In this document: piece after piece, positions 4,491 through 60,269 of the stretch
How positions within the stretch are numbered: the stretch's first letter is position 1
Layout: the number at the start of each line of letters is the position of its first letter
Origin: Macrostomum lignano
Taxonomy: Eukaryota
Direction: 5' to 3'
DNA: 64,000 nucleotides
NCBI GenBank assembly: GCA_002269645.1
Contig: NIVC01000330.1
Coordinates: 310,001-374,000 of the forward strand
The notes under the pieces: model-generated
Told to the model about the DNA's origin: nothing
Databases searched by the model: none
What the model saw: the letters and a program-made list of their open reading frames with translations, nothing else
Position numbers and translations under genes: made by a program

Positions 4491-5149
4491 CCTCAAGCAT
4501 TCAGCTACCTCACCTCTGATGATTACGTTCGTACGATGTCAACTTAATTTCAAAGCACGCACTTTTGCAGAGACCTTGCCTATTGCTGCAATATTCTAGT
4601 GCTTAGAAGCTACATTCGTCCCATACAAATTTTCAAACACTCGTAGCAGTAAGCTATGCATAATGCGAACTTGCAAATAAAAAAAGCACTATGTGTATTT
4701 AAATGCGCCCTTTTAAATTTCGCATCAAAACTTGCCGAAAAGATTGACGTCTGCTTATCTGTTTAGTGCGACCGCTATGATCAATGATGAAGTTTTTGTC
4801 TTTTTTCCCTCGCTTTTGTGTCCCGTCTTTAATTAGCATCGCAGACTGTCTGTTCAGCTTGAACGCATTGTTAAAACAACGCGCTTAGTTTTTTAGTTTC
4901 ATTGCATTTGCCCGTCGGCTGACTAGCACGCGGAACCAGAGTATGCTGACCCTTCATCGCATCTGAACGCAACGAAATATTGAAAAGATTACTCTTAATT
5001 TGTGTCTATAATAGAAGTTTTAAAAGACCAAGTAGCAAGTTTTGTTTTGGACATGGCCAATTATAACTTATTGGAATTAAATGCTGCACAGTTTTAACTG
5101 CTTTGCGCCAGGCCCGAGAAGGGAGCAAGAGAGTATGTTGGGGGATGAG

Positions 5150-5880
5150 AAAGGAGAGTGAGAAAGAGTTGGGGGATGAGACAGGAGAGTGAGAAAGAGG
5201 GTGACAGGGAGAGAAGGGAGACAGGGGAGCGAGATGAATACAGGGAGAGAAGGGAGACAAGAAGAGAGGGAGAGAGGAGAGAGGAGAGAAAAAAGAAGAG
5301 AGGGGGAGAGAGGAGACAGGAGACAGAGGGAAAGAGGAGAAGAGAAGAGAGAGAGGAGAGAGGAGAGAGGAGAGAGAGAGAAGAGAGAGAGGAGAGAGGA
5401 GAGAGAGGAGAGAGGAGAGAGAGGAGAGAGAGGAGAGAGAGGAGAGAGGAGAGAGAGAAGAGAGAGAGGAGAGAGGAGAGAGAGGAGAGAGGAGAGAGGA
5501 GAGAGAGGAGAGAGAGGAGAGAGAGGAGAGAGGAGAGAGAGAAAGAGAGAGGAGAGAGAGAGGAGAGAGGAGAGAGGAGAGAGGAGAGAGAGGAGAGAGA
5601 GGAGAGAGAGGAGAGAGGAGAGAGAAGAGAGAGAGAGGAAAGAGAGAGGAGAGAGGAGAGAGAGAGGAGAGAGAGGAAAGAGAGAGGAGAGAGGAGAGAG
5701 AGAGAGGAGAGAGGAGAGAGAGAAGAGAGAGAGAGGAGAGAGAGAGGAGAGAGAGGAGAGAGAGAGGAGAGAGGAGAGAGAGAGAGGAGAGAGGAGAGAG
5801 AGAGAGAGAGAGGAGAGAGAGAGGAGAGAGGAGAGAGAGAGAGAGAGGAGAGAGGAGAGAGAGAGGAGAGAGGAGAGAGA
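5150..5880. repeat. Polypurine GA-rich satellite
   Basis: About 700 bp almost entirely G/A. Confidence 0.95.
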
Positions 5881-6237
5881 AGTCTGGACAGAAACAAGTT
5901 AAGAAGGAACAGTCAATCAATCTGGTGGATCAGTGATACCTTAAAAACATACCTTTCTTTCTAATTGGCTTCTTTGATAGAAGCCGTACCGTGGTGCAGT
6001 CTTGATTTATTATCTCTTTGGGAGTCTAAACACGCTATTGCTACCGTATCTGTCTCCGGGGGCAACCCTGTCTGCTGATTGCAAATTTCACCTGTCGATC
6101 AGAGATGCTTGTATACTGCGAGCGATTCGTGATAATTAGACTGGAAAAACTCATTGGCTCAGGGGTTAGTTATGAGCATTTTTTTTACATGATTAAGCCA
6201 TGAGTTTTGCACCGTGACTCTCACTGCCATTGTGATG

Positions 6238-13128: not shown

Positions 13129-13483
13129 AGAACGTGTCAGTCCCAGAAAAGATTTCTTAGAATTACCTCGTAGTATTTCGCGTGGAGGCAAGTTAACTAC
13201 AAACGCGCTCTGTGTGCTGTAGTAAGCTGGGTAGAACTCTATGCTATTGTTGGGGCAGAAAGTGACAGACAGCCTAAAAAAAGAAACAATAAAATTAAGA
13301 AGCCAGACCCACCAACTCCATTTAATTGCTGCTAGATCCATGTTAAGCTATTTATAGCACAGGGCTGTACAGTCACTGAGCACCACGGGCTCATTGCCTC
13401 ATTCTGCGGGTAGACAGTAGCGGCCATCGTGGAAATCCCAAGCATTTTTGAAACAGAAGTTCCAAGGTTTTTTATTCTGCAAT

Positions 13484-13490
13484 TATAAAA
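13484..13490 (+). promoter_or_regulatory. Candidate TATA box of paralogue A
   Basis: TATAAAA about 60 bp upstream of the ATG; position is the only support. Confidence 0.35.
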
Positions 13491-13548
13491 GCGTAAAAGA
13501 AAAATTGACAAACGCTCAGACACTCGAACCACAAACTTCGATACAAAA

Positions 13549-14343
13549 ATGCATCTCAGCCAGGTAATTTTCCTGTGCCCGCTGCTGCTGCTGCTCACCA
13601 GCGCCCAGTCACCGCCCGAGCCCCGACGGCTGCTCCGCTGTCCCGCCGAGTTTGCCGCTCTCGTTGAGCCGCTGCCCGACAATCCGGACGTGCAGCCGGT
13701 GCTCACGACCGGCCCCGGTGTCCGGCTGCAGACTGTTGGGTTTCTGCGGGACTCCGAGCTGCGGCTGGACTCGGACGGCCGACTGTGGCTGAGCAGCAGG
13801 TTGGCTGGCAACCGCTTCAGCGGGCCGCACGTGCTGCTGTGCTCCGACACCGAGCGCCGCGGCCTCATCACTTTCTCGCTGTTCGTCAGACTGGCGCCGC
13901 CGGACCTCACCGAGGTCAACACTCCAGACGCCCTGCCTGAAGCAACCGCGACATCCGCTGCTCCGTCTGCAGCCACCAAGACTTCCGCTGCTTCGTCTGC
14001 AACTACCAAGACCTCTGCTGCTACGTCTGCAACTACCAAGACCTCTGCTGCTACGTCTACAGCTGTCAAGGCATCAGGCGCTCCGGAGAGGCTCGCCGCA
14101 GCTCTCGCCTCCGCCGCCAACGGAGCCGTCAGCCACATCGACGACCCGCTGTTCTGCGCTCTCGCCGCTGCCGTCCTGTTGCTCCTCGCAATCTGCGTCG
14201 CTCTCGCCGTCACCCTCGTAGTCGCCCTTCGCCGACGTCGCTGCACCCAGCGCGGTCTGAAGGGCCCGATCTTCGTCTCCAACCTGGGGTGCAGCGCCGA
14301 GCCGCTGTTTCAGCAGAGCGAGGAGGTCAAGATGGAAGTTTGA
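13549..14343 (+). CDS. Intronless type I membrane protein, paralogue A (signal peptide, ~90-aa beta-rich domain, Thr/Ala stalk, TM, short tail)
   Basis: 264-aa ORF; hydrophobic signal peptide; domain shared with three neighbours; TM LFCALAAAVLLLLAICVALAVTLVVAL followed by RRRR. Confidence 0.9.
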   Translation: MHLSQVIFLCPLLLLLTSAQSPPEPRRLLRCPAEFAALVEPLPDNPDVQPVLTTGPGVRLQTVGFLRDSELRLDSDGRLWLSSRLAGNRFSGPHVLLCSDTERRGLITFSLFVRLAPPDLTEVNTPDALPEATATSAAPSAATKTSAASSATTKTSAATSATTKTSAATSTAVKASGAPERLAAALASAANGAVSHIDDPLFCALAAAVLLLLAICVALAVTLVVALRRRRCTQRGLKGPIFVSNLGCSAEPLFQQSEEVKMEV

Positions 14344-14796
14344 AAAGCAGATTAGGAACCTTTTCGAACTGGGAAGATGATGCTTAATCTGTCATTCTTT
14401 GCAGATATTTTTACTCGAAAGACAATATTGTACATGTATTCTTTTTTGGATGAATTGAACTTTTTCACTGCATATTCTCTCCAGCTTTATCCTGAATCTC
14501 ATAAACACTTAGCTGTCTGTCTGAATATGTTTTTCCATTATGAATACAAGAATAATTTAATTGATTGTTATCAAATAATGAAGACATTGTTATTCAGTAA
14601 ACATGTGCTAAACTTTCACAACTGAGTAAATAAATTTTACTAAATTCGCTATGCAATTCGAGTCATTGGTGCAAAATGGTAAACAGATTATTAACAGTCT
14701 TGATGCGGTATATTGTTCGGTTCCCATGAATCAATAACAAAAAGCGCAGATTTGTTTAAACATTGTCAAGGAGTTAGAAAAAAACCGCAAAGAATG

Positions 14797-15447
14797 TCAG
14801 ACATCCGTGACCTCGTGAAACTCCCCTAGCGACTTGCCCAGCAGCTGCTGGTGCCCGCTCTTCAGACCTGTCAGCGGCACGAATATTTTCTTTTGCCTGT
14901 GCTGCCAGCAGCAGGTTCGCCTTGTTGACACCACCACGAGAGCAGCGGTGAGGCAGAGGCAGGCCAATAGGAGCAGCAGTGCAGTTCCAGCCAGGACCAG
15001 TTCCCGCGGTCTGAGTCCACCGATGTCCTCAGCAGCAGCTTCTGAACTGTTATGCGGTGCCGTTGTCACAGGATTTGCCAGCGACTCTGTCCTCAGGCGG
15101 ATGTACAGCACGAAGCTGACAGTTTTCCGGTCGTTTTGGCACTCTAGATGGTGCGGCCCGCTGAAGCGGCTGCCGGCCGACCTGCTGGAGGCGCCAACGT
15201 TCAGCCACAGTCGGCCGGCCGAGTCCAGCCTCAGCTCGGAGTCGCGCAAGAACCGGACAGTCTGCAGCCGGACACCAGGGCCGGTCGTGAGCACCGGCTG
15301 CAGGTTCGGGTCGTCGGGCAGCGGCTCAACGAGGGTGGCGAACTCGGCGGGACATCGGAGCAGCCGTCGGGGCCCGGGCGGTGGCTGGGCAGCAGCTGCC
15401 GTTACGCAGAGCAGCAGTGCAGCGAGAAGGATTCCAGCAAAGTTCAT
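14797..15447 (-). CDS. Intronless type I membrane protein, paralogue B
   Basis: 216-aa ORF with the same RRLLRCPAEF...RLDSAGRLWL...RFSGPH domain, a short stalk, TM and tail. Confidence 0.9.
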   Translation of the reverse strand: MNFAGILLAALLLCVTAAAAQPPPGPRRLLRCPAEFATLVEPLPDDPNLQPVLTTGPGVRLQTVRFLRDSELRLDSAGRLWLNVGASSRSAGSRFSGPHHLECQNDRKTVSFVLYIRLRTESLANPVTTAPHNSSEAAAEDIGGLRPRELVLAGTALLLLLACLCLTAALVVVSTRRTCCWQHRQKKIFVPLTGLKSGHQQLLGKSLGEFHEVTDV

Positions 15448-15519
15448 TTCAGAGTCTGTAGAGGCTAGCGGAGATTTACTAGAGAGCTGAGCTCAATGTT
15501 CTCAAAGCTCTCGCACAGC

Positions 15520-15527
15520 TTTAAATA
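15520..15527 (-). promoter_or_regulatory. Candidate TATA box of paralogue B
   Basis: TATTTAAA about 75 bp upstream of the ATG; position is the only support. Confidence 0.3.
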
Positions 15528-15994
15528 GTGCTCGCGGCGGACCCGAGGACAGAGCGGCGTGAATAGATGAATAAGCAAATTAGCCTCCGCATAACTCATG
15601 GTTTCAACCCCTCTCACGGGTTTCTCTGGGTAGCCCGACTGCCCCTTGCCATTGTCAGTTGAGCAGGCTGAGTCTAGTATATATCTAGAGCTTATTTGTG
15701 GCTCAGTGGGAGGGAGGGTGGTTCTTGTTGGCATCCGCATGACCCATCCAAAAATAGGCTCACTGCGGCTATATCTGACGACTGCCCACACGGAACACAA
15801 AAAACTAGTTTTTTTTAACGCGGATTTTCTATTTACATCGAAGATTTTTATTACTTTGTCGGCAAATGCAGACTGTCAATTGCGGAAGCAGTGCTCTAGG
15901 AAGCTAAAAAAAGGCACCAAAAACTGTAAAATTACTTAATTTATGTATTTTATGAGTTTTAGACACCTTAGACTTGTCTAAAAGTAGCTTTTTT

Positions 15995-16690
15995 CAGGCT
16001 GGGCCACCGCCCCCCCCCCCTCAGATTCTCAGGCTGGGCCACCGCCCCCCCCTCAGATTCTCAGGCTGGGCCACCGCCACCGCCTCCCCCTCAGATTCTC
16101 AGGCTGGGCCACCGCCCCCCCCCCTCAGATTCTCAGGCTGGGCCACCGCCCCCCCCCTCAGATTCTCAGGCTGGGCCACCGCCCCCCCCTCAGATTCTCA
16201 GGCTGGGCCACCGCCCCCCCCCTCAGATTCTCAGGCTGGGCCACCGCCCCCCCCTCAGATTCTCAGGCTGTGCCACCGCCACCGCCCCCCCTCAGATTCT
16301 CAGGCTGTGCCACCGCCACCGCCCCCCCTCAGATTCTCAGGCTGGGCCACCGCCACCGCCTCCCCCTCAGATTCTCAGGCTGGGCCACCGCCCCCCCCCC
16401 TCAGATTCTCAAGCTGTGCCACCGCCACCGCCTCCCCTCAGATTCTCAGGCTGGGCCACCGCCACCGCCTCCCCCTATAATTCTCAGGCTGGGCCACCGC
16501 CCCCCCCTCAGATTCTCAGGCTGGGCCACCGCCCCCCCTCAGATTCTCAGGCTGGGCCACCGCCACCGCCTCCCCCTCAGATTCTCAGGCTGGGCCACCG
16601 CCCCCCCCCTCAGATTCTCAGGCTGGGCCACCGCCCCCCCCCCTCAGATTCTCAGGCTGGGCCACCGCCCCCCCTCAGATTCTCAGGCTG
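15995..16690. repeat. ~32-bp minisatellite (CAGGCTGGGCCACCGC(C)nTCAGATTCT)
   Basis: Tandem copies with variable C-runs. Confidence 0.95.
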
Positions 16691-16931
16691 AGAAAGAAAC
16701 TACACGAAAGCAGAAACTTCACGCTCTATCTATGTTTGACAGTTTGTTGTATTGTGGCAAAAAATTCAACAAAAGCTACAAAATTCATCAAAGGATAAAA
16801 CGAAAAAGTCAGTACAGGTGTGGGTAAGAATTTGAATGCAGTGGATCTACAATGCCTAATGTTTATATTGTCAATATTGTCGATCGAATAATCTATTAAA
16901 ATACTTTAGATATTCAAGCTGTATATTCTAG

Positions 16932-17359
16932 TAGGTGTTCAGCAGGTGTTCAAGCCAGATGTTCAGCAGATGCTCAGCAGGTCTTCAAGCCAGATGCTCA
17001 GCAGGTGTTCGGGCCAGATGCTCAGCAGGTATTCAGGCCAGATGCTCAGCAGGTGTTCAAGCCAGATGCTCAGCAGGTATTCAGGCCAGATGCTCAGCAG
17101 GTGTTCAAGCCAGATGCTCAGCAGGTATTCAGGCCAGATGCTCAGCAGGTGTTCGAGCCAGATGTTCAGCAGGTGTTCGAGCCAGATGTTCAGCAGGTGT
17201 TCGAGCCAGATGTTCAGCAGGTGTTCGAGCCAGATGTTCAGCAGGTGTTCGAGACAGATGTTCAGCAGGTGTTCGAGCCAGATGTTCAGCAGGTGTTCGA
17301 GCCAGATGTTCAGCAGGTGTTCGAGCCAGATGTTCAGCAGGTGTTCGAGCCAGATGCTC
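16932..17359. repeat. 24-bp array (CAGCAGGTGTTC(G/A)AGCCAGATG(T/C)T)
   Basis: The inverted counterpart lies at about 18810-19262. Confidence 0.95.
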
Positions 17360-17407
17360 GGAAGACACCACTTCTAAAACACACGGTTTTCATTCTCTGA
17401 CTTCCTG

Positions 17408-17485
17408 TTGCACTGGCGGGAGTCGAACCCGCGCCAGCTCGTCCGTCCTCAGGACGAGTTGCTCTACCGCTAAAGCTACAGTGCA
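17408..17485 (-). ncRNA. tRNA-like gene copy 1 (non-canonical anticodon arm)
   Basis: Acceptor TGCACTG/CAGTGCA, A-box TAGCTTTAGCGG, T arm GCGGG-TTCGACT-CCCGC, hairpin CTCGTCC/GGACGAG; TATA at 17527-17532 and T4 at 17376-17379. Confidence 0.6.
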
Positions 17486-17972
17486 ACCTTAGCTGTCTGC
17501 TCTCATCTGGACTGCATGAATCACAATTTATAGCCCAGCTTAGTTGGATAATTCCGGAGTCATGGAAAAGCCACGCCATCCTTTGTGAATTATTTGAGCT
17601 ATTTTAAGGAGGGGCCTTTTTTTAAGAGGCAATCGCCTATTTTAAACTCTAGTTGTGTGTAACAGTCGTAGAAGTAATATTAATTTTAATAATTGTATTC
17701 AAGACGTGAAGCGGCCACTCAGAGCTGCAGTCTATTTAGAGACAGTTTATGTGCTAAAAATATCCGTTCCTTTAGCCCGGCTTCACTTGGAGATTGAATC
17801 TGTACTGCTGCAGCAGATGAATCATTTTTACAGGTATTACTTTTGAAAGACACAGAAAACATTTCATTAATTAAAGTTATCTCTCTTTCAACTTTTTATT
17901 GTATTCAAAATTCTGAATCATTGAGCATATCTCTATGGTGTTAAATGACTTGTTACAGTATATCTCAGTATT

Positions 17973-18341
17973 GCTGAGGTGCCCTGACACAGGGGGAATG
18001 CTGAGGTGCCATGACACAGGGGGAATGCTGAGGTGCCATGACACAGGGGGAATGCTGAGGTGCCATAACACAGGGGGAATGCTAAGGTACAATGACACAG
18101 GGGAATGCTGAGGTGCCATGACACAGGGGGAATGCTGAGGTGCCATAACACAGGGGGAATGCTGAGGTACAATGACACAGGGGGAATGCTGAGGTGCCAT
18201 GACACAGGGGGAATGCTGAGGTGCTATAACACAGGGGGAATGCTGAGGTACAATGACACAGGGGGAATGCTGAGGTACAATGACACAGGGGGAATGCTGA
18301 GGTACAATGACACAGGGGGAATGCTGAGGTACAATGACACA
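17973..18341. repeat. 27-bp minisatellite block 1 (GCTGAGGTGCCATGACACAGGGGGAAT)
   Basis: Tandem copies visible. Confidence 0.95.
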
Positions 18342-18684
18342 GGTCAACAGATTTAATCTCCAAGTGAAGCCGGGCCTAAGTGGCGGCTATTTTTAGCACA
18401 CAAACTGTCTCTAAATAGACTGCAGCTCTGAGTGGCTGCTGCAGATCGTGAACACAACTTGAGCCGCCAGTTCCTTGTGACGATTTTATTACTTCTACGA
18501 CTGTACATTCGGCTTGAGCTTAAAATAGGTGACTTTCCTCGGCGGCCCTCCTAAAAATACTCGCTTTTTTAGCTCAATAATTCACAAAGGATGGCGTGGC
18601 TTTTCCATGACTCCGGAATTATCCAACTAAGCTGGGCTATAAATTATGATTCAAGCAGTCCAGCTGAGATCAGACTGCTAAGGT

Positions 18685-18761
18685 TGCACTGTAGCTTAAC
18701 GGTAGAGCAACTCGTCCTGAGGACGGACGAGCTGGCGCGGGTTCGACTCCCGCCAGTGCAA
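18685..18761 (+). ncRNA. tRNA-like gene copy 2
   Basis: Same fold as copy 1; TATAAA at 18638-18643 and TTTT at 18790-18793. Confidence 0.6.
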
Positions 18762-18789
18762 CAGGAAGTCAAAGAATGAAGACCATGTG

Positions 18790-18793
18790 TTTT
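18790..18793 (+). terminator. Candidate Pol III T4 terminator
   Basis: First TTTT, about 29 nt after the tRNA-like domain; conserved in copy 1. Confidence 0.4.
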
Positions 18794-19723
18794 AGAAGTG
18801 GTGCCTCCGGCGCATCTGGCTTGAACACCTGCTGAACACTTGGCTCGAACACCTGCTGAGCATCTGGCTCGAACACCTGCTGAACACTTGGCCTGAACAC
18901 CTGCTGAACATCTGGCTTGAATACCTGCTGGGCATCTGGCTTGAACACCTGCTGAGCATCTGGCTCGAACACCTGCTGAACACTTAGCCTGAACACCTGC
19001 TGAACATCTGGCTTGAACACCTGCTGGGCATCTGGCTTGAACACCTGCTGAACATCTGGCTTGAACACCTGCTGAGCATCTGGCTTGAACACCTGCTGAG
19101 CATCTGGCTCGAACACCTGCTGAGCTTCTGGCTTGAACACCTGCTGAGCACCTGGCTTGAACACCTGCTGAGCATCTGGCTTGAACACCTGCTGAGCATC
19201 TGGCTTGAACACCTGCTGAGCATCTGGCTTGAACACCTGCTGAACATCTGCCTCGAACGCCTGCCAAAATATACGGCTTGAATATCGAAAGTACTCAAAT
19301 AGATGATTCAATATTACTGACATTATAAGTATATATTAATAACTATAGATAATTTGTATTCATACTCTTACCTACGCTTGTATTGACATTATTGTTTCAT
19401 CCGTTGTTGACTGTTGCCATAAATTTAAAATTTACTGTCAAGCAGCAATAGAGCGTGAAGTTCTTTTGGTGACGTTGTTGACTTTTTGTCAGTTTACCTT
19501 TTTTACGTTTACTTTTACAACCATTATAAACTGCCTACTTGATAAAGGCATAGCTTGAGTCCCTAATTTCGACATACCCACCCGTCCATCAGATCTTGAC
19601 GATGCTTCAGATTTGGCAAACGATAAAAATTTCAGGTGCCTACCGACATCCCAATCCCCCATACCCCTGTCTACCGCTAAGTACAATACTCCCCATTGCG
19701 ACTGTGTAATGTTCGTACAACAC

Positions 19724-20300
19724 CCAGGGGGAATGCTGAGGTGCCATGACACAGGGGGGATGCTGAGGTGCCATGACACAGGGGGAATTCTGAGTTGCCA
19801 TGACACAGGGGGAATTCTGAGGTGCCATCACACAAGGGGAATGCTGAGGTGCCATGACACAGGGGGATGCTGAGGTGCCATGACACAGGGGGAATGCTGA
19901 GGTGCCATGACACAGGGGGAATGCTGAGGTGCCATGACACAGGGGGAATGCTGAGGTGCCATGACACAAGGGGAATTCTGAGGTGCCATGACACAGGGGG
20001 ATGCTGAGGTGCCATGACACAGGGGGAATGCTGAGGTGCCATGACACAGGGGGAATGCTGAGGTGCCATCATACAAGGGGAATTCTGAGGTGCCATGACA
20101 CAGGGAATGCTAAGGTGCCATGACACAGGGGGAATGCTGAGGTGCCATGACACAGGGGGGATGCTGAGGTGCCATCACACAAGGGGAATTCTGAGGTGCC
20201 ATGACACAGGGGGAATGCTGAGGTGCCATGACACAGGGGGGATGCTGAGGTGCCATCACACAAGGGGAATTCTGAGGTGCCATGAAACAGGGGGATGCTG
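19724..20300. repeat. 27-bp minisatellite block 2
   Basis: Same unit and orientation as block 1. Confidence 0.95.
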
Positions 20301-20736
20301 ATATCTGAGGCGCGAAAGCTTGTTTTCTGTGAAGGATATTTCTGTTTTATAAAAAACCAGCCATTCTGACTATGTAAGGATAGTATAATTTTTAAAAAGA
20401 TTTTGTTAACCTCAACTTGTTGAATTGAATAAAAAATCAATAAAAAGGCAAAATCTTGATAATTATTGAATATTAGTTGTATATTTCGGAAATCGATCAC
20501 ACACTTGGGTACCAGTTAGGTACTGACAAAACATTTTTAGTGTATGGATTGGAAACGTGTAAGCTAGAAGAAGAATAATAATAATGTAATACATTAATGA
20601 GTCTGAATGATATTTCAGATGAATGAAATCATACTCGCAATAAGGAACGCCTGAAACTCAAAGATATGTACAAGTTTGAGCCGTCAATGAAGCACTGAAA
20701 GAGACTAGGCAAAACTGTCATTAGTAACCATCGGAA

Positions 20737-21513
20737 TTAGACTTGATCGCGCTCGAGGATCACGACTTCATGCGAAGTTGGCTTGCTCTGCTGGAACAGC
20801 GGCTCGGCGCTGCCCTTGACGATCGGTTTGAAGATCGGGCCCTTCAGACCTCGCTGGGTGGTGCGACGGTGGCTGCGACGGCCGACGGCTAAAAGGGCGA
20901 AGGCGAGAGCGATGCAGATTGCGAGGAGCAACAGGACGGCAGCGGCGAGAGCGCAGAACAGCGGGTCGTCGATGCGGCTGACGGCTCGGTTGGCGGCGGA
21001 GGCGGGAGCTGCGGCGAGCCTCTCGGGAGCGGCTGATGCCTTGACAGCTGTAGACGGAACAGCGGAGGTCTTAGTGGCTGCAGACGGAGCAGCTGATGTC
21101 GCGGTTGCTTCAGGCAGAGAGTCTGGAGTGTTGACCTCGGTGATGTCCGGTGCCAGTCTGACGAACAGCGAGAAGGTGGCGAGGCCGCGGCGCTCGGTGT
21201 CGGAGCACAGCAGCACGTGCGGCCCGCTGAAGCGATTGCCAGCCGACCTGCTGAAGTTGCCGCCGATCAGCCACAGTCGGCCGGCCGAGTCCAGCCTCAG
21301 TTTGGAGGCCCACATGAACCGGACAGTCTGTAGTCGGACACCGGGGCCGGTCGTGAGCACCGGCTGCACGTCCGGATTGTCGGGCAGCGGCTCCACGAGG
21401 GTGGAGAGCTCGGCTGGACAGCGGAGCAGCCGTCGGGGCCCAGGCGGTGACTGGGCGCTGGCGAGCAGCAGCAGCAGAGGCCAGAGTGCCAGCAGCTTGA
21501 TGACGCTGAGCAT
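20737..21513 (-). CDS. Intronless type I membrane protein, paralogue C
   Basis: 258-aa ORF; the domain, stalk, TM and GLKGPIF tail motif are close to paralogue A. Confidence 0.9.
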   Translation of the reverse strand: MLSVIKLLALWPLLLLLASAQSPPGPRRLLRCPAELSTLVEPLPDNPDVQPVLTTGPGVRLQTVRFMWASKLRLDSAGRLWLIGGNFSRSAGNRFSGPHVLLCSDTERRGLATFSLFVRLAPDITEVNTPDSLPEATATSAAPSAATKTSAVPSTAVKASAAPERLAAAPASAANRAVSRIDDPLFCALAAAVLLLLAICIALAFALLAVGRRSHRRTTQRGLKGPIFKPIVKGSAEPLFQQSKPTSHEVVILERDQV

Positions 21514-22308
21514 TATTTAAACTAACAGTTGAATAAAATATTCGTCAGAGTTCTTGCAGACCTGGCAGGGTGTATAAAATAGTGTCAGCTGCAGCGGGCC
21601 TCTATATACTTGTGGTTTGGAAGCTGGCACTACCCCGTAAATTCCAGCCCTTTACCCGCGGGAAATCCAGCCGCGCTCATTGGCCACTACAAGCGGATGA
21701 ATATCTTGCGTAAATCTAAAAATAGTAACAAATCTGTTCTAATTTCTGATGCAGAACATGGAACGGACTGCTTATGTCACAACGGTTTGTTCCTAGCTCG
21801 TAGTAGCTAAACTAACGGTTGATGCAATTGACGTCAGAAAATTTTGTTTAACTTTCTAACTGTTAGTTACACTCTTACCTTTCAAAGCCTTTGAAATTAC
21901 CTTTCATGTCTTCCCTTTCAAAGTCCCAAAGGCATTTAAAACCGCCATAATAATTCAATACTGAAAAGTCTAACAAACTCCTATCTCGTCAATGTGTTTT
22001 TTGCCTGAAAATTTTCATTAGCTTCCAAAAAAATCTTAATGAAATGCTAGGAACGTCCGATTGCTGAGAAACTTTCAATAATTTCGGCCTTACAAAAAAG
22101 CCAAACTGCTTGTATTTGCAATGTTTTGAACGGAATGCCAAGCCAAGTATATTTTACAGAAATGATTCGTGAAGCAGTTACTTCCGGCATGTACAATTAA
22201 AATGACAATTCATTACGAAGTGCTACAAAGATGCGTCTATTATGTTGCATACAAAATATTGTCAACGGCGATATAAATCGATCTTTTATCGATTCCGTGT
22301 CGCAGAAA

Positions 22309-22883
22309 TCAAACTGGCAGTTTCTGAGCTCTGCTCGCCGCCGCGGTGAAGTGTCGAAAGTCGCGGTAGGGCCGGGCGCTCTGGCTGCGAACTCGCCGAT
22401 CCCGCAGTCCAGCCGCGCAGGCCAGGGCGGCCGTCAGGACGGCGGCGAGGACTCCGACTGCGGCCAGGGCAATTTTGGTGGTCTTGCCGTCAACTAAAAA
22501 CCGGTCTGCTTGCAAAGGAGATGACGACAATGACAGGTCGCCCGGAGGCTGGTGGCTGACGAACAGCGAGAAGGTGGCGAGGCCGCGGTGCTGAGTGTCG
22601 GAGCACAGCACGAAGTGCGGCCCGCTGGAGGTGCCACCGCTCAGCCACAGTCGGCCGGCCGAGTCCAGCCGCAGCTTGGAGTCGCGCAGGAACCGGACAG
22701 TCTGCAGCCGGACACCGGGCCGGTTGTGAGCACCGGCTGCACGTCTGGGTTGTCGGGCAGCGGCTTAACGAGGACGGCGAACTCGGCGGGACAGCGGAGC
22801 AGCCGTCGGGGCCCGGGCGGTGACTGGGCGCTGGTGAGCAGCAGCAGCAGTGAGCACAGGAAAATCACCTGGCTGAGATGCAT
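22309..22883 (-). pseudogene. Paralogue D, with a 1-bp frameshift (pseudogene or sequencing error)
   Basis: The G4 run present in paralogue C is G3 here (22717-22719). Restoring one base gives an intact ORF with signal peptide, domain, TM and tail. Confidence 0.8.
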
Positions 22884-23265
22884 GCTGTCTACTTGCTACT
22901 GAAGTGGCTGAGGTTAAAGCTTTTTTACATTAAGCAGCTGCATTGCTTTTAAAGGCCACAGCAGAGTAGCAGAATTTCTACCCCGCCTCGACCCCAGCGG
23001 AGAGTTGTTTTCAAAAATATACCAGAGAAAACCCGCGGAAAACTCTCAAGCCAATCTGAGGCAAGAAAACAAGGCACAAGGGTTTTGGTTTATTTTTAGT
23101 CCCCTGCGTCACCGCCAGCCAGCAGGTTAAGGCATGCAGAATTCAAGCATTTGTTTACAACAAATGCGTAAGAGGAGTGAAAATTTGACAGGCTGCTTAT
23201 TTGTGAAGCATCTGTTCTATGTGAGATACTCGATCTTATTTTTGATTGTGGCCAGTTCATAGACT

Positions 23266-23690: not shown

Positions 23691-24363
23691 CTGCCGTGCC
23701 CGAGTCCTAGAATATATTTGCAGTGTTCTCTAACATTTTTCTGAAATTCTTACTTCAAAAAACAAGCGATAGCGGAAATTCTAATTAATGCAAAAAACTA
23801 AGGTCGTCACAAGATTCAAAGCAAAGCGCAAACGGGCTTTTCTGACGCAGCAATTAGTGAGGCAATCCAGAAAATGGGTAGAAAAAAGGGAGTGTCTAAA
23901 CAATTTCAAGCGTTTATTAAATTACTCGCACATGTACTTAAAGTGGTTCAGCCTAGAGCAGTAGTGGGGAGATGGGGCGCAAAGCTATTCCTTCGGTAGG
24001 AGGAGGGACTTAGGGGCTCGTAAATCCGCGACAGTCAATTTTGAGACAAAATCAAGAAACGATTCGCTGCAAATGTCTGTTTCTAAATAAGCTGATGATC
24101 ATTCATCTTAGACTATCTCTTTGAGCTAGCTAATAGTTAAAGTCTGCCTGTTTGTTTGTCTGTTGCTTCTGTCACTCAGCTGGCGGAGCCTCCGACTGGC
24201 TGCTGTCACAGCGTGAGGTCAAAGTTGAGTCGGCGCTGTCTGAAAAATGGCGGTTAATAAAGTAAAACAGTGAGCATGACTGACGAAGAGACCTCGAGTC
24301 TTCATTTTTGTGCGCCCAGTTTTAAAGCCGTAAAATTTGCCCCACAAAGCCAAGCCGGCTCAC

Positions 24364-24797
24364 GCACAGAAATCCGTGCTGCTCCTCCTGGAAGTCCTGG
24401 TGGCGGCAGCGGCTGCCCCCGTGGCCGCTGGCTCGCCGGTGTCGCTGCCCTCGCTGTCGCCGTCGCCGCAGCCACCGCCGGACGAGGACGCATCCGAGGA
24501 GTACAGAAAGCGGAGATACTCGGCATCCGTACCGACGCCGGCGCCGACTTTGCCAGCGCAGAGGTCTCCAAGAGCGGCAAACTGGGTGACGGCGTCGGCG
24601 GCAGCTCTGGCAGCCGACAGGGCGGACGCGGCGGCCATCGGATCCTCAACGCCGACGCTGCCGCGGACGGCGTCCCCGGTGTCCCCGGCGCTGACCGTGG
24701 CCAGCTCGATTGACGATCCGTCGGCGGGGCTCCGCGAGCCGGGCAGAAACTCGTCCACCCCAGGGCTGCTGGACGACTCAAGTTGATCGGCCACCTC
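24364..24797 (-). CDS. Gene X exon 3
   Basis: Open frame EVADQLESSSSPGVDEFLPG...TDFC(A)|gtgagc; phase 0/2. The acceptor could be at 24797 or 24794. Confidence 0.7.
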
Positions 24798-24842
24798 CTT
24801 GTTGTTGTCAGTTTATTATTAATGTGTTTACCGCCATTGGCT

Positions 24843-24966
24843 TAACAATAACAATAATTGATTACAAATGCCCCAATTGGGCCAGATGTGCAACCGATAG
24901 CTCAGCCGCAGCTGTTGCGCAGCGCATCTGAAGGCTGCGTACGGCTGTTCAGTCCAAGGACTGGGG
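24843..24966 (-). mobile_element. 3' tail fragment of the same SINE family
   Basis: Reverse complement of about 45249-45340, with a simple-repeat tail. Confidence 0.75.
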
Positions 24967-25172
24967 GTGTTCATTTTACGCGAGTGTAATTGTGCTAATT
25001 GTCATTAGGAGAAGTTTACATAGCAAAAGATACTCTCTCACCTGCATGCTGATGGCGGCCCATTTTGTAGCGGCGGAGGCGGCAGCCCGCTTGCGCAACG
25101 AGGACCACTCGGTCTGGGCGCTCTGCGATTGACAAGCGCGACTTTTATGCTTTTGCTATATCTCGCGATTAC

Positions 25173-25173
<1 letters not shown>

Positions 25174-25261
<88 letters not shown>

Positions 25262-25400
25262 AACCAAACAAACAAACAAACAAACAAACAAACAAACAAA
25301 CAAACTAACTAACTAACAACCAAACAAACAAACAAACAAACAACTAACTAACTAACTAACTAACAACCAAACAAACAAACAAACAAACTAACTAACTGAC
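25174..25400. repeat. (TAAC)n/(CAAA)n microsatellite
   Basis: Direct inspection. Confidence 0.95.
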
Positions 25401-25439
25401 TAATTAGTTAATGCTCTCTAAAGTCAATCGCTCTCTCAC

Positions 25440-25696
25440 CACCGTTGAAGTGCTGGCCGCGTCGCAGTCCGACATGGTCGTGTCGATAGACATGGCAGCG
25501 GCGGTAATCGCGACTGTTGAAGCGGTGGGAGCGACAGAAGCGGCAGCAGCCGCAGACGCAGCGGTAGTGAAGACATCTTCGTCGTCACTGTTGTTATCAT
25601 CATTGCCGGTGTCCGGTTCGGTGTCGGCGTCGGCGCTGACCTCCTCGGACCGGCACAGGTGGTGGTTGCTGGCGCTGATTTGTTGCGGCTGCTTGG
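25440..25696 (-). CDS. Gene X exon 2 (acidic, Ala/Thr-rich)
   Basis: cccgcag|(S)KQPQQISASNHHLCRSEEVSADADTEPDTGNDDNNSDDEDVFTT...STSTV|gtgaga; phase 1/0. Confidence 0.8.
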
Positions 25697-25833
25697 CTGC
25701 GGGTTTTTTAATTTAACTTAAAAAACAGCATGCGAACTGCCATACTGTAAGTAGGCGAACAAAGAAAATAAGCTCCGGAAAATGTGATCGAATAAAAACT
25801 CAAGCAGGAAGCCATGGCACTCTCTTAGCTTAC

Positions 25834-27013
25834 AGTTCAATTCGTTCACTGCCTCGACGCGCTCGCTAGCAGCGGAGGCCGGCGCCTTTTGCTTCATCCA
25901 GACGGCCTGTTGAAAAGCTTCGAAACGCTTAGCGCTGCTAGGCTCTATAGCGGCCAAGTCAAGACCGGCGTCGTTGTTTTCGTCGTTGTCCGGCACCTCC
26001 GCGCCGAACTGAATGACTACAGTCTGGTAGTCGGAGCCGACGCCGCCAGTGCAGGACGTTGATGGCGGCAGCGGCAGGCGGACCAGGCAGGACAGCGGCC
26101 CGGCGTAGGCTGTCGAGGCGATCCACACCCGGCGGCCGCTCCGACGATGGTCGAAGAGAATCTCGCCGCCTCCGCCGTCGACGTTGCCGCAGTTTTCGCG
26201 TCTCGGCGTCAAATGAAAGCTGAGCAGCGGCCGGCAGCGGTGGCACAGCAGCGACTTGGCGGCGTGGTGGGCGGGGCAGCGCCACAGGCGATAGTCGTGA
26301 CCCGGTAGGGCGGCCAAGCTGGCGACGCCCGAGCTGGGCACCCGCTCCACCAGCTGGTGCTCGGGGGGCTGCACGCCCCGGTGGAAAAAGTAGGACGCCG
26401 CCGCGTCCACGTCGCAGTCCCGCTTGTAGCAGTCGTCGTCGCTCTCAGCGACGTCCTTTTCGCCGCCTGAGAAGCTCAGCCGGCTGCCGATGCCGTCGCT
26501 GGCCAGACCGCGGCGGAACTCGACGTCGGCGGCGGTGACTTTGATTTCGCCGCGGACGCGACAGGCTCGAAGACGGCGCAGTGCGGCGTCGGTGTCGTCA
26601 AAATCGTCGCCGCTGTTCGAAGCGCTGTTGTCCACGTTGCTGGCAGCGGTGGCGACAGCGGCAGCGGAGCTGCAGCTGCCGGGCACCGAGCAGAAGAAGC
26701 CACCGCAGAGGTGGCAGGTCGCCTTGGCAACAGCGACGTCGGCCAGGTCGGCCTGGGCATCCTCCGAGTCCAGGTCGAGCTCCAGGCCGGGCGGGGTGAC
26801 GCGCTGGTCGCTGCTGCTGCTGCTGTCGCCCAGGTCGACCGGCTGCAGCTCGAAGTCGAGAGTCGGGGCTGTCGCAGCCTTGACGGAGTCCTGCAGCTTC
26901 CGGCGCCGGTGCCGACGGACGGCGACCACGCCGACGACGACTGCGGTAGTCAGGACACCGCCAAATACGGTCAATATGATGAAGGGCACGACTCCTGACA
27001 CTACTGCGGCCAT
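25834..27013 (-). CDS. Gene X exon 1: unknown protein, N-terminal TM anchor plus Cys/His clusters
   Basis: ATG with an in-frame TGA 24 nt upstream; TM segment PFIILTVFGGVLTTAVVVGVVAV followed by RRHRRRK; GC-rich third positions; donor T|gtaagc (phase 1). Confidence 0.85.
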
Positions 27014-37046: not shown

Positions 37047-38006
37047 CATCCCTAGCAGTGTACATCTCTATCACAGTGTATTTCTCTCTTTATCATGGTT
37101 CAATAAAGCAATAGCTCGTAAACCACTATTAAACGAATACTTATGCAAGCCATAAAAGCTACGAGTGCGCAACACTTTACGAGCCTATACTATAGTGCCA
37201 TTTCAATTGTCTTCCACTTAAAAAGCTTCGAAAAGATGTTGAAGAAAAAGACGAGATTTAATGAAAGTAGAAATGTGCACCTGGACCAGCTGCCTTAATT
37301 AGATTCACAGCCACAATATTTTTGGCATTAAAAATGAGACGCTGACAGAAGCGGAGAAAGAGCTAAACTGCTTGGGCGCAGAGCACAGTGCAAACTATAA
37401 TATATGACTCATCGAGGACACGGGACAGAGAAATTGCCAACTACTCCTCAAAATGCCACGTATAGGCTATAGGTGGGGTATATAAAACTCTCCAATAACA
37501 TATTGAGAACGGCAGGGCTTGGAGACTAGCAGGGGGTTAATGGTAGGGGACACAGTATTGCGTTTTGTTGGGACGCGAGAATCCCCCCTTTACTACACCG
37601 CCCCCTCCCCAGCTGAGTTGGGATTTCCATTCCTAATCCAACAATGGAAATTTGCCAGCCCCGGCAACTACAGGGACTGAGTTCCTTCAACTTCGCGCCG
37701 GGAAGGGGGCAGTGCCAAGCAACGAGCACAGGGCATGAGTCATCAAACAGAGGAACAAGTTAATAAGTTTAGAGCAATGCCTCCAAGAGAAAGTTTTCAA
37801 TGAATGCGTAAAGGGGGCGATTTTTACTGATTACATAAGACAAGCAACAGCTGCTGGCAAGTGTGCCGGCCCGTGATCAGTGACTGATTCCTACAGCACC
37901 TGGTTACGTTCAGCGAGAATTATGCTTTTAGTAGCTATTTAATGTGCTCCACAATTAACCTGCGCAATTGAGAGGACTGCGGTCCAATCTTGGGTTGGAG
38001 AGGGTC

Positions 38007-38760
38007 ACGGCCCAGCACCTGAGGATCTGGGAGACTGGCCCAGCAACTGAGGATCTGGGAGACTGGCCCAGCAACTGAGGATCTGGGAGTCTGGCCCAGT
38101 AACTGAGGATCTGGGAGGCTGGCCCAGCATCTGAGGATCTGGGAGTCTGGCCCAGTAACTGAGGATCTGGGAGACTGGCCCAGCACCTGAGGATCTGGGA
38201 GTCTGGCCCAGTAACTGAGGATCTGGGAGACTGGCCCAGCAACTGAGGATCTGGGAGGCTGGCCCAGTAACTGAGGATCTGGAAGGCTGGCCCAGCAACT
38301 GAGGATCTGGGAGGCTGGCACAGCAACTGAGGATCTGGGAGGCTGGCACAGCAACTGAAGATCTGGGAGGCTGGCCCAGCAACTGAGGATCTGGGAGGCT
38401 GGCCCAGCAACTGAGGATCTGGGAGGCTGGCCCAGTAACTGAGGATCTGGGAGACTGGCCCAGCAACTGAGGATCTGGGAGGCTGGCCCAGTAACTGAGG
38501 ATCTGGAAGGCTGGCCCAGCAACTGAGGATCTGGGAGGCTGGCACAGCAACTGAGGATCTGGGAGGCTGGCACAGCAACTGAGGATCTGGGAGGCTGGCC
38601 CAGCAACTGAGGATCTGGGAGGCTGGCCCAGCAACTGAGGATCTGGGAGGCTGGCCCAGCAACTGAGCATCTGGGAGGCTGGCACAGCAACTGAAGATCT
38701 GGGAGGCTGGCCCAGCAACTGAGGATCTGGGAGGCTGGCCCAGCAACTGAGCATCTGGGA
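38007..38760. repeat. 28-bp minisatellite (GGCCCAGCAACTGAGGATCTGGGAGGCT)
   Basis: The same family recurs at about 63697-64000. Confidence 0.95.
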
Positions 38761-38779
38761 TGGATCAGACGCAACCCAC

Positions 38780-38979
38780 CTCAGCAGGCTGGCGCTGGTC
38801 CTGCCCTGATTCGAACTGCTGCTGGTCGGCCTCCCACTGCAGGTGGCTGTCGTCAAGTCTTTCCTCGGCGGCCTCGTCGACGCCAACAGCATAGGGCTGG
38901 GGCTGATAGTGGTCCCAGAGCTGGTCCAGGTCCTCTGGCCCGTTAGTAGCGACGGCTTCCTCCTCAGCCTCGTCTTGGC
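38780..38979 (-). CDS. KASH/spectrin-repeat gene, exon h (acidic, Trp motifs)
   Basis: ctcacag|(G)QDEAEEEAVATNGPEDLDQLWDHYQPQPYAVGVDEAAEERLDDSHLQWEADQQQ...PAE|gtgggt; phase 1/0. Confidence 0.85.
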
Positions 38980-39311
38980 CTGTGAGTAGTTCAATTTAAC
39001 AAATCATAACATTAGCAAATTTTAATTTCTATTTACGATTGAAATATTGAACTTTATGGAAACAAACAGTTAATATAGTGTTTAAACATCTGAAGCTTAA
39101 GTGCTTAACTAATATTGTAAAGCAATAAAAACTGGCTGTATAACATTGTTTAACATGCAAATCATACGATATGATTAATAAAAACTGCAACTTGTCATCA
39201 TCAACATTTCTATTGATCGAATCGATGCTAAAACAGTAAAAACAGATAGGAGAACTTGATTGCTAAAACAGGGAATAAATAAATGGCTGACTTATGTAAA
39301 AAAAACTATAC

Positions 39312-39622: not shown

Positions 39623-40255
39623 TCTGTCTGTCTCTCTGCCGGTCTGTTTCTGTCATAATGTCTTAGTGTCTGCCTGTGTCTCAGTGTCTGTCTGTGTCTC
39701 AGTGTCTGTGTCTTAGTGTCTGCCTGTGTCTCAGTGTCTGTCTGTGTCTCAGTGTCTGTCTGTGTCTCAGTGTCTGTGTCTTAGTGTCTGCCTGTGTCTC
39801 AGTGTTTGTCTGTGTCTCAGTGTCTGTCTGTGTCTCAGTGTCTGTCTGTGTCTTAGTGTCTGTCTGTGTCTCAGTGTCTGTCTGTGTCTCAGTGTCTGTC
39901 TGTGTCTCAGTGTCTGTCTGTGTCTCAGTGTCTGTCTGTGTCTTAGTGTCTGTCTGTGTCTCAGTGTCTGTCTGTGTCTCAGTGTCTGTCTGTGTCTTAG
40001 TGTCTGTCTGTGTCTCAGTGTCTGTCTGTGTCTCAGTGTCTGTCTGTGTCTTAGTGTCTGTCTGTGTCTCAGTGTCTGTCTGTGTCTCAGTGTCTGTCTG
40101 TGTCTCAGTGTCTGTCTGTGTCTCAGTGTCTGTCTGTGTCTTAGTGTCTGTCTGTGTCTTAGTGTCTGTCTGTGTCTCAGTGTCTGTCTGTGTCTTAGTG
40201 TCTGCCTGCCTGTCTGTCTTTCTGTCTTAGTGTTTGTCTGTCTGTCTGTCTGTCC
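39623..40255. repeat. 18-bp (TCTCAGTGTCTGTCTGTG) satellite
   Basis: Direct inspection. Confidence 0.95.
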
Positions 40256-40352
40256 GTCAGCAATTCGACGCTCCACAGGGCGGCCCCAAACGGAGCTGCA
40301 GGGCAGCAATATGAATATAAATATATAGATGGATCAAGCAACGGCAGCTCAC

Positions 40353-47095: not shown

Positions 47096-48132
47096 TTTAT
47101 TACTCTTCACTACTTTTTTCATTACGCTAGTAGTTAATAAATCAATACGAGCTACAGGTATCTTAGCTGTGAGTAAAATTAATTGTAACAACATATGAGA
47201 TATATGTAATGTATCTAATCACAGGTGTATGAGTTCGAGTATGATCTTCTTATACTTAAAATTTGGGCCATCGTCTAGTACAAGCTAGCTCTATATATTT
47301 TCCATTAGTCTAATTACCCTCTCTATCAGTCGGACCTTCTAACCACTTCCGAGCGGGCAATTAGTTAGACTCTTGTAAAATATGAATAATTAGCCAAGAT
47401 TTTTATTATCTCAGATCTCTCGTAAAGCTAACAGAGCTCGAGATAGATAAGTAACTAATAAGTTAAATAATATATAACTCACTTAATCGTCGGCAGTGGA
47501 TTGTCATCGGCGTAGATTGAACGATAAATGGACTGACTGGGCTAAATTACTTCTTAATGTTGTAAAATAATTAATACATAGCATTACTATCAATTATCTA
47601 GAGTAACATTCTCTGAGTCCCACTTTTCTCGTAGCGCATTTTGAAAACACAAACTCAGCATGAGTAGCCACAGTTATAGTAGAAACTACCAACTGACAGG
47701 GGCCATAAAGTGTGTTGCATTTATCTCAACGGGTTTGAGGCCTTCTCTCACTGTGTGGTGGGGGGAGGGGGCTGTGAGGGGTGGCTGGCGGCCACGGCGA
47801 ATCAACGCGACTGGAAATGGGGGGGGGGTGGAGGGGGGTGGAGAGGGGGTGCAGTGTGGCGAGAGAGCTTTAATCAGGGTGCAGCTGTTAGTTAAACGCC
47901 GGTGCGAGGCCGTTCTCGCTGCACCTATTATATTTTATTATCAGAACGTGGCTTGCTGATTTTAAGGGTACACACAACAAACAAATTATTCTACAAATCG
48001 GAAAAAATAATATCAATTAAACCCTGTGAGCGCAGGTGAACTTATACAAAAATAATTTTGTTTATCTGTTTATTCAACTGATAACAAACAGCAACACAAT
48101 TGCCACTAAAGTACAACTTGATAAAGAAATCG

Positions 48133-59474: not shown

Positions 59475-60269
<795 letters not shown>

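What the first reader, a model, noticed from the sequence alone, without database searches (positions are those of the whole stretch)
13549..22883. Cluster of four intronless, unrecognised single-pass membrane-protein genes with one compact beta-rich ectodomain
Seen: paralogues A (+), B, C and D (-) share a signal peptide and a ~90-aa domain (RRLLRCPAEF..LVEPLPD.P..QPVLTTGPGVRLQTV.F...S.LRLDS.GRLWL..SGPH..C). Two invariant Cys, a stalk, a TM helix and a short tail follow. Inference: the LRLDS.GRLWL strand pattern resembles a single cadherin-like or Ig-like beta-sandwich, but I cannot match it to a named family. Tandem intronless, diversifying surface proteins are typical of recognition, adhesion or gamete-interaction systems.
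Basis: partly seen in the sequence, partly recalled or inferred. Interest (0 to 1): 0.75.

Follow-up and report, generated by a model that had tools for sequence, protein, structure and literature searches.

The report
Flatworm-only surface membrane protein gene cluster
Four neighbouring genes of the flatworm Macrostomum lignano encode small cell-surface membrane proteins with no detectable relative in any other organism; they are real genes under selection, and gene-to-gene copying keeps one shared outer segment alike, but their fold and function are still unknown.

Summary
The window is Macrostomum lignano contig NIVC01000330.1 (310001-374000). Four paralogous single-exon ORFs sit at the stated coordinates. 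Each has a signal peptide, a ~100-aa ectodomain with two Cys, a stalk, one TM helix and a short tail ending in Val. Copy D has a 1-nt deletion here and is split into an 80-aa stub plus an out-of-frame remainder. Intact D copies exist on two other contigs.

Pfam, PDB sequences and an exhaustive profile search of 1.84 billion representatives find no relatives outside M. lignano. Two AlphaFold runs failed (pLDDT 41-43), and Foldseek gave only insignificant beta-sandwich hits. The cadherin/Ig idea is therefore neither confirmed nor excluded.

The genes are real. Copies on duplicated contigs give omega = 0.37 (p = 8e-5) in the annotated frame only, and B, C and D carry transcript-based gene models. 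A carries none.

"Diversifying" selection is not shown: paralogue omega is 0.55-0.9. The near-invariant block (about codons 31-105) is also conserved at synonymous sites, while the rest is saturated and the flanks are unrelated. That points to patchy gene conversion.

Verdict: a lineage-restricted family of type I membrane glycoproteins of unknown function. Moderate-low interest.

The parts
13549..14343 (+). Gene A, 264 aa, intact. Signal peptide 13549-13605, ectodomain 13606-13896, Ser/Thr/Ala/Pro-rich stalk 13897-14142, TM 14143-14229, tail 14230-14340 ending KMEV.
   Evidence: It is not called as a gene in either assembly copy. The ORF is intact in both copies, with omega 0.29.
13950..14058 (+). 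30-bp coding tandem repeat (10-aa unit) in the stalk of A, 3.6 copies. The copy on contig NIVC01001406.1 has one unit fewer (254 aa).
14797..15447 (-). Gene B, 216 aa, intact, convergent with A. Signal peptide 15388-15447, ectodomain 15094-15387, short stalk 15001-15093 (NSS sequon), TM 14923-15000, tail 14800-14922 ending VTDV.
   Evidence: The 98%-identical copy is GenBank PAA68283.1 (BOX15_Mlig009548g1).
20737..21513 (-). Gene C, 258 aa, intact. Signal peptide 21454-21513, ectodomain 21151-21453 (NFS sequon), STAP-rich stalk 20968-21150, TM 20881-20967, tail 20740-20880 ending RDQV.
   Evidence: It is called as a gene on this contig and is identical on NIVC01001406.1. The divergent copy is BOX15_Mlig007760g1.
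22309..22883 (-). Gene D, interrupted here. One base is missing between 22716 and 22717, so an 80-aa ORF (22641-22883) is followed by an out-of-frame remainder (22309-22716). Intact 191-aa copies (Mlig010170g1 and g3) exist on two other contigs.
13603..13792 (+). Homogenised block in A (N-terminal part of the mature ectodomain, QSPP..RLWL), 88-93% nt-identical among all four paralogues.
   Evidence: (pair I23)
15201..15390 (-). The same homogenised block in B. It is the only part of B with high nucleotide identity to A, C and D.
21265..21454 (-). The same block in C.
22641..22829 (-). The same block in D. It contains the 1-nt deletion.
   Evidence: (pair I24)
13484..13489 (+). TATA-like element 65 nt upstream of the ATG of A. 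Similar elements lie at 15521-15527 (B, 80 nt upstream), 21603-21608 (C, 95 nt) and 22946-22953 (D, 70 nt). These are putative separate promoters, by inference only.

Best explanation
This is a small family of type I membrane glycoproteins restricted to Macrostomum, with four paralogues per locus. The locus is present three times in the redundant M. lignano assembly.

Each protein enters the secretory pathway through a cleavable signal peptide. It displays a ~100-aa ectodomain: a Pro-rich N-terminal stretch followed by five predicted beta-strands, probably closed by one disulphide. The ectodomain sits on a stalk that is long and mucin-like in A and C and short in B and D. One TM helix anchors the protein, and a short basic tail always ends in valine.

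The paralogues are old, since their flanks, signal peptides, TM segments and tails are saturated. Patchy gene conversion keeps the ectodomain-coding segment alike: nearly the whole CDS between A and C, signal peptide plus ectodomain between A/C and D, and only about codons 16-105 in B.

Inferred function: the proteins present one common extracellular binding module, at different heights and with different cytoplasmic ends. The C-terminal Val may serve as a PDZ ligand or an ER-export signal. That would make them cell-surface receptors or adhesion molecules for a shared, unknown ligand.

Shown: the genes are real, the protein layout, the lineage restriction, purifying selection and DNA-level homogenisation. 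Inferred: the disulphide, glycosylation, the binding role and the tail motif.
For: Identity of the window: NIVC01000330.1 of GCA_002269645.1.

Lineage restriction: only M. lignano hits among 5.8e9 proteins and among 1.84e9 representatives read exhaustively with a profile.

Real coding genes: the copies on duplicated contigs give a pooled omega of 0.37, with 32 of 65 changes non-synonymous against 72% expected (p = 8e-5). The annotated frame has the lowest omega of all six frames and is the only one with no stop. The ORFs are intact in 9 of the 10 copies seen. The assembly's annotation is built only from RNA evidence, and B, C and D have gene models.

Protein layout: one leader and one TM segment, two ectodomain Cys, STAP content of 0.66-0.71 in the A and C stalks with a variable 30-bp repeat, and a terminal Val in every copy.

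Homogenisation: dS within the block is 0.09-0.24 for all pairs, while it is saturated elsewhere. At identical amino acids, codons are the same/different 45/8 in the block against 27/25 elsewhere for A-B (p = 3e-4), and 49/5 against 18/18 for B-D (p = 4e-5). A sliding identity plot shows sharp mosaic boundaries. The flanks share no similarity.
Against: There is no direct expression, localisation or binding data. A has no gene model in either copy, and B has none in this window. The fold is unknown because AlphaFold reached only pLDDT 41-43.

The conserved N-terminal 38 residues are Pro-rich and predicted to be unstructured, so 'compact domain' may overstate it.

Synonymous conservation could in principle reflect a nucleotide-level constraint rather than gene conversion. 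A cassette duplication onto different backbones could also produce the same mosaic pattern. The PDZ/ER-export reading of the terminal Val rests on general knowledge only.
Confidence: 0.6

Rival explanations
1. The ectodomain is a single cadherin-like or Ig-like beta-sandwich, and the cluster is a diversifying recognition, adhesion or gamete-interaction system.
For: Beta-strands are predicted in the C-terminal 60 residues. The Cys-Cys spacing of 63-71 residues falls within the Ig range. The weak Foldseek top hits include the N-cadherin prodomain, desmocollin and C-cadherin ectodomains and a palladin Ig domain. The second half of the ectodomain has omega of about 1.0-1.4 in pairs that involve B, and 1.08 for A-D.
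Against: No cadherin or Ig Pfam hit appeared at E <= 10. No PDB sequence hit appeared. hhalign against cadherin EC1 gave 0.1%. There are no DRE or DxNDN Ca-binding motifs and no Ig-type Trp or YxC pattern (read). The Foldseek hits had E >= 0.2 and TM < 0.5 on a model of pLDDT 43. Whole-gene omega is 0.55-0.9 between paralogues and 0.24-0.69 between duplicated copies. The counts behind omega > 1 are tiny.
Confidence: 0.15
2. The ORFs are not functional genes. They are decaying or spurious open frames in duplicated GC-rich DNA.
For: D is frameshifted in this window. A is never annotated, and B is not annotated here. No homologue exists outside the species. Long antisense ORFs overlap the genes.
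Against: Purifying selection acts specifically in the annotated frame: omega 0.37, p = 8e-5, no stops. Nine of ten copies are intact. The signal peptide, TM segment and terminal Val are retained despite saturated divergence. The gene models are transcript-based. The D lesion is a single base in a C run within an otherwise identical copy from a PacBio assembly, so it may be an assembly error.
Confidence: 0.05
3. The shared block is conserved by selection on the nucleic acid itself (an RNA structure, a regulatory element or an antisense product), not by gene conversion.
For: Synonymous sites are conserved. The block in A folds better than shuffled controls, with z = -3.4 and z = -3.1.
Against: The same block in B, C and D has unremarkable z-scores of -0.4 to -1.7. 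No compensatory changes were found, with 1 of 62 pairs. The best antisense frame shows a mirror-image omega of 0.42 but contains stops.
Confidence: 0.08
4. The ectodomain is one or two beta-propeller (NHL-like) blades that assemble into a propeller by oligomerisation.
For: One bacterial NHL/SGL propeller protein (P0005) matches profile positions 57-101 in 7 repeats, with a summed E of 5e-7.
Against: Only one of the very many NHL proteins in the library was hit, and its score is the sum of short repeats. Pfam NHL and SGL models do not match the family. The motif L-x-L-D-S-x-G-x-L-W carries little information.
Confidence: 0.03

Closest known systems
Small mucin-like type I membrane glycoproteins (architectural class, e.g. 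podoplanin, endomucin, CD164, TMEM154-type proteins)
   Same: Signal peptide, Ser/Thr/Ala/Pro-rich stalk with a variable tandem repeat (A and C), a single TM helix and a short basic tail. The only Pfam near-hits are such composition-driven families (TMEM154, Mucin, Stevor, FAM174-like), and all fall below cut-off.
   Different: There is no sequence homology. These proteins carry a distinct ~100-aa two-Cys module at the N-terminus, and B and D have almost no mucin-like stalk.
Cadherin repeat / cadherin-like domains (classical cadherins, cadherin prodomain, dystroglycan- and sarcoglycan-type cadherin-like domains)
   Same: Similar size of about 100 aa, predicted all-beta C-terminal half, membrane-anchored extracellular position, and weak Foldseek neighbours.
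   Different: There is no HMM or profile similarity and no Ca-binding motifs. The N-terminal third is Pro-rich and predicted to be coil. The structure model is too poor to judge.
Clustered inverted or tandem paralogues homogenised by gene conversion (concerted evolution; named from general knowledge, e.g. inverted hsp70 pairs, globin and palindrome genes)
   Same: Neighbouring paralogues in both orientations, with sharp mosaic boundaries of high identity inside otherwise saturated genes and unrelated flanks.
   Different: Here the common denominator of all the tracts is one ~190-nt segment that encodes the N-terminal part of the ectodomain. This suggests that selection favours keeping that module identical.
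NHL / SMP-30-type beta-propeller blade
   Same: The motif L-x-L-D-S-x-G-x-L-W, preceded by G-V-x-x-Q-T, resembles the blades of one bacterial protein.
   Different: It occurs once rather than as a 6-fold repeat. There is no Pfam NHL match.

Membership tests
Cadherin superfamily | Significant match to a cadherin-repeat profile | tested here: not met
   No Cadherin or Cadherin-like Pfam family at E <= 10 for any of the five ORF pieces.
Cadherin superfamily | Ca2+-binding motifs (DxD, DRE, DxNDNxP) at the domain ends | tested here: not met
   Reading the alignments shows no DRE or DxNDN. The only acidic cluster is LPDNPD in the Pro-rich N-terminal part.
Cadherin superfamily | Seven-strand Greek-key beta-sandwich fold | tested here: inconclusive
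   AlphaFold reached pLDDT 41 and 43. Foldseek found no hit with E <= 1e-3, and the cadherin-related hits had E = 0.3-0.7 and TM 0.38-0.48.
Immunoglobulin superfamily | Match to Ig/V-set/I-set/C2-set profiles, and a Cys...Trp...Cys core with a YxC motif | tested here: not met
   No Ig Pfam hit. The two Cys are 63-71 residues apart, which is compatible. However, the only Trp lies 50 residues after Cys1, and Cys2 sits in the context HxLxC, not YxC.
NHL-repeat / SGL beta-propeller | Several tandem ~40-aa blades that match the NHL/SGL profiles | tested here: not met
   There is a single blade-like stretch. No NHL or SGL Pfam hit. Only one library protein was hit, through 7 summed repeats.
Mucin-like type I membrane glycoprotein (architectural class) | Signal peptide, STP-rich repeat stalk, single TM helix and short tail | tested here: met
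   Hydropathy, composition and tandem-repeat analysis. Fully met in A and C. B and D have short stalks that are not mucin-like.
Mucin-like type I membrane glycoprotein (architectural class) | Dense O-glycosylation and surface localisation | not testable with these tools
   Needs biochemistry and imaging.
PDZ-ligand / C-terminal-valine cargo | Hydrophobic C-terminal residue within an x-x-Phi motif | tested here: met
   All ten copies end in Val: KMEV, VTDV, RDQV, KLPV. Binding or export function was not tested.
   Gene models exist for B, C and D, in an annotation built solely from RNA-seq and transcriptome assemblies. A has none. No tissue data could be found.

The most novel reading that the evidence does not exclude
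The ~100-aa module is a previously undescribed extracellular fold. It would act as a shared recognition surface that selection keeps identical among paralogues through gene conversion, while stalk length and cytoplasmic ends diverge. On this reading the cluster is a Macrostomum-specific cell-cell or mate/gamete recognition system in a hermaphroditic flatworm.
Probability: 0.12. Interest if true: 0.6.

Novelty: new variant of a known kind. Interest (0 to 1): 0.3.

Why it matters
Lineage-restricted surface proteins are candidates for species-specific biology such as adhesion, mating and self/non-self recognition. M. lignano is a tractable regeneration and sexual-selection model with RNAi and transgenesis, so the family can be tested directly.

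The clear mosaic of gene conversion around one extracellular segment is a neat small example of concerted evolution acting on a module rather than on a whole gene. Orphan membrane proteins are common in flatworm genomes, however, and nothing here yet points to an unusual mechanism.

Tried and rejected
(1) Pfam on all ORF pieces gave only sub-threshold, composition-driven hits.

(2) PDB sequence searches with a single sequence and with a profile found nothing.

(3) AlphaFold2 was run on the family alignment with and without the signal peptide. It reached pLDDT 41 and 43, which is unusable. Foldseek on the second model gave no significant hit, and its list is not evidence.

(4) The NHL-propeller lead from the profile search was rejected as a repeat-summed chance match. 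P0006 is a junk repeat translation.

(5) An RNA-structure explanation for the synonymous conservation was rejected. Only A shows excess stability, and there is no covariation.

(6) A run test in the style of GENECONV, using variable sites only, was uninformative for B because the block has few variable sites at all. It was significant for A-C, A-D and C-D.

(7) A search for relatives of D's unrelated stalk/TM/tail returned nothing, not even the D copies themselves. A local phmmer scores those copies at E = 1e-42, so that negative result is uninformative.

(8) Expression look-ups by gene ID in the full text and in five papers' supplements found nothing.

(9) The neighbouring 671-aa gene was checked for context. 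It is also an orphan with no Pfam domain.
Full report
**What is there**

The ORF list shows four related frames: A 13549-14343(+), 264 aa; B 14797-15447(-), 216 aa; C 20737-21513(-), 258 aa; and D, split into 22641-22883(-), 80 aa, and 22309-22611(-) in another frame. tblastn of each against the window finds exactly these four places (E = 1e-38 to 1e-81) and no others.

D lacks one base between 22716 and 22717. The sequence reads ggccc-ggtg where the other copies read ggccctggtg or ggccccggtg. D is otherwise 100% identical to an intact 191-aa copy elsewhere. This is either a very young null allele or an indel error of the long-read assembly.

**Where it comes from**

The closest proteins are all from Macrostomum lignano. 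The window is NIVC01000330.1:310001-374000 of assembly GCA_002269645.1.

The locus exists at least three times in the assembly. NIVC01001406.1 is 98-99% identical and carries all four genes, with D intact. NIVC01000587.1 is 93-96.5% identical; D and C lie within reach of the fetched flank. [quoted passage not shown]

The gene models are BOX15_Mlig010170 (D), Mlig007760 (C) and Mlig009548 (B), all with single-exon coding regions. A has no model in either copy, and B has none in this window. An older UniProt entry, A0A1I8IJA8 ('ZU5 domain-containing', 1147 aa), is a chimera of B, the antisense of A and a neighbouring gene. It has no Pfam domain.

**Are they real genes?**

Comparing the same gene between the duplicated contigs gives omega of 0.29 (A), 0.24 (B), 0.41 (C) and 0.69 (D). 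Pooled, 32 of 65 changes are non-synonymous against 72% expected, giving omega 0.37 and p = 8e-5. Of the six reading frames, the annotated one has the lowest omega and is the only one free of stops. The long antisense ORFs are therefore mirror effects of a GC-rich coding region. Together with the RNA-based models, this excludes the reading that these are spurious ORFs.

**Anatomy**

- Each protein has an N-terminal hydrophobic leader that ends in ..SA/AA-Q.
- The mature ectodomain is about 100 aa and has exactly two Cys.
- The stalk is 66-71% Ser/Thr/Ala/Pro in A and C. In A it contains a 30-bp coding repeat that differs by one unit between contigs. The stalk is short in B and D.
- There is one strongly hydrophobic TM segment and a basic tail of 28-47 residues.
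- N-glycosylation sequons occur in B (NSS) and C (NFS).
- Every copy ends in Val (KMEV, VTDV, RDQV, KLPV), although the tails are otherwise saturated. From general knowledge, a C-terminal Val can act as a PDZ ligand (VTDV resembles the class I consensus) or as an ER-export signal. This is inference only.
- Each gene has a TATA-like element 65-95 nt upstream of its ATG. The 5' and 3' flanks share no similarity. This suggests four separate promoters.

**What is the ectodomain?**

No family could be assigned.

- Pfam gives no hit on the ectodomain at E <= 10.
- PDB sequences give nothing.
- A profile read against every one of 1.84 billion representatives returns only the family itself plus two artefacts. 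One is a bacterial NHL-propeller protein whose seven near-identical blades each weakly match L-x-L-D-S-x-G-x-L-W. The other is a junk repeat translation.
- Two AlphaFold2 runs gave pLDDT 41 and 43. Strands were predicted only in the C-terminal 60 residues (VRLQTV, SELRL, RLWLSS, GPHVLLCSD, LITFSLFVR), and the Pro-rich N-terminal 38 residues came out as coil.
- Foldseek on such a model is not evidence. The best hits had E = 0.2-1 and TM 0.36-0.48, and were mixed small beta-sandwiches that included a cadherin prodomain and cadherin ectodomains.
- hhalign against a classical cadherin EC1 gave 0.1%.

The cadherin/Ig idea is thus untested at the fold level and fails at the sequence level.

**How the family evolves**

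Between paralogues, whole-gene omega is 0.55-0.9. dS is 0.20 for A-C, about 0.5 for A-D and about 0.8 for A-B.

The picture changes when the genes are split into regions. In alignment codons 23-85, dS is only 0.09-0.24 for every pair, while the signal peptide, stalk, TM and tail are saturated for all pairs except A-C. At positions where the amino acid is identical, the codon is also identical in 85-91% of cases inside the block. Elsewhere the figure is about 50%, which is the saturation level (A-B p = 3e-4, B-C p = 1e-3, B-D p = 4e-5).

Sliding identity shows a mosaic:
- All pairs are 80-100% identical over codons 31-105.
- D matches A and C at 85-97% from the ATG to codon 120, then drops to 28-48%.
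- B drops to 33-51% outside about codons 16-105.
- A and C are about 90% identical from codon ~9 to ~255, yet their flanks are unrelated.

Within the block A-C is the most distant pair, although A and C are the closest pair elsewhere. Old paralogues with patchy, repeated gene conversion explain all of this. The ectodomain N-part is the one segment that every tract includes.

An RNA-structure constraint was tested and rejected. Only the block in A is unusually stable (z = -3.4), the blocks in B, C and D are not, and there is no covariation. In the second half of the ectodomain omega is about 1.0-1.4 for pairs that involve B, and 1.08 for A-D. These values rest on 3-10 synonymous changes, so positive selection is not demonstrated.

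**Best reading**

This is a Macrostomum-restricted family of type I membrane glycoproteins. They display a common N-terminal module on stalks of different length and carry different cytoplasmic ends. They most likely act as surface receptors or adhesion molecules for a shared ligand. The anatomy, the reality of the genes, the lineage restriction and the homogenisation are shown. The binding role, the disulphide, glycosylation and the tail motif are inferred. Tissue expression could not be retrieved.

**Novelty and score**

The sequences are already in GenBank as hypothetical proteins, and nothing has been published on them under their IDs in the held library. The architecture is a familiar kind, and the ectodomain has no detectable relatives. 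Orphan membrane proteins are frequent in this genome, so a specialist would not be surprised. The module-centred gene conversion is the most instructive feature. Interest: 0.3.

Noticed in passing
window 15994-20301: The 5-kb spacer between B and C consists almost entirely of minisatellites. There is a 32/38-bp array (15994-16690), 24-bp arrays in inverted orientation (16933-17359 and 18812-19264, arms 92% complementary) and 27-bp arrays (17972-18343 and 19725-20301). On NIVC01000587.1 the 27-bp array is expanded to about 4 kb.
   Followed up: partly
window 24172-27013 (-): Upstream of D on the same strand lies a 671-aa gene (BOX15_Mlig030438g2) with an N-terminal TM segment. It has no Pfam domain and no homologue outside M. 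lignano, so it is another orphan.
   Followed up: partly
window 51751-55351 (-): Ty3/Gypsy-type LTR-retrotransposon pol. One 1051-aa ORF holds RT and RNase H, and the integrase (zinc-binding and core domains) continues in a different frame, so this copy carries a frameshift.
   Followed up: partly
window 59556-60272 (+): An exon that encodes a coiled-coil and TPR protein (TPR_12/TPR_10, E = 1e-30). By recall it looks like a kinesin light chain; this was not tested further.
   Followed up: no
window 13332-15447 and leftwards (-): UniProt A0A1I8IJA8 ('ZU5 domain-containing protein', 1147 aa) is a chimeric gene model. It joins B, the antisense strand of A and a neighbouring gene, and it has no Pfam hit. 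The database name is misleading.
   Followed up: yes
window 13603-13792 (+): The conserved block of gene A alone folds much better than shuffled controls (z = -3.4). The equivalent blocks of B, C and D do not. This is unexplained and possibly chance.
   Followed up: yes
window 22312-22557 (-): The large word-indexed protein search with D's C-terminal 82 aa returned no hit at all, not even the identical D copies. A local phmmer scores those copies at E = 1e-42. Negative results from that tool for short, TM-rich queries should not be trusted.
   Followed up: yes
window 5006-5964, 37935-38994, 39676-40330, 48100-48768, 49984-50607: Further long minisatellite arrays produce long artefactual ORFs in several frames.
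   Followed up: no
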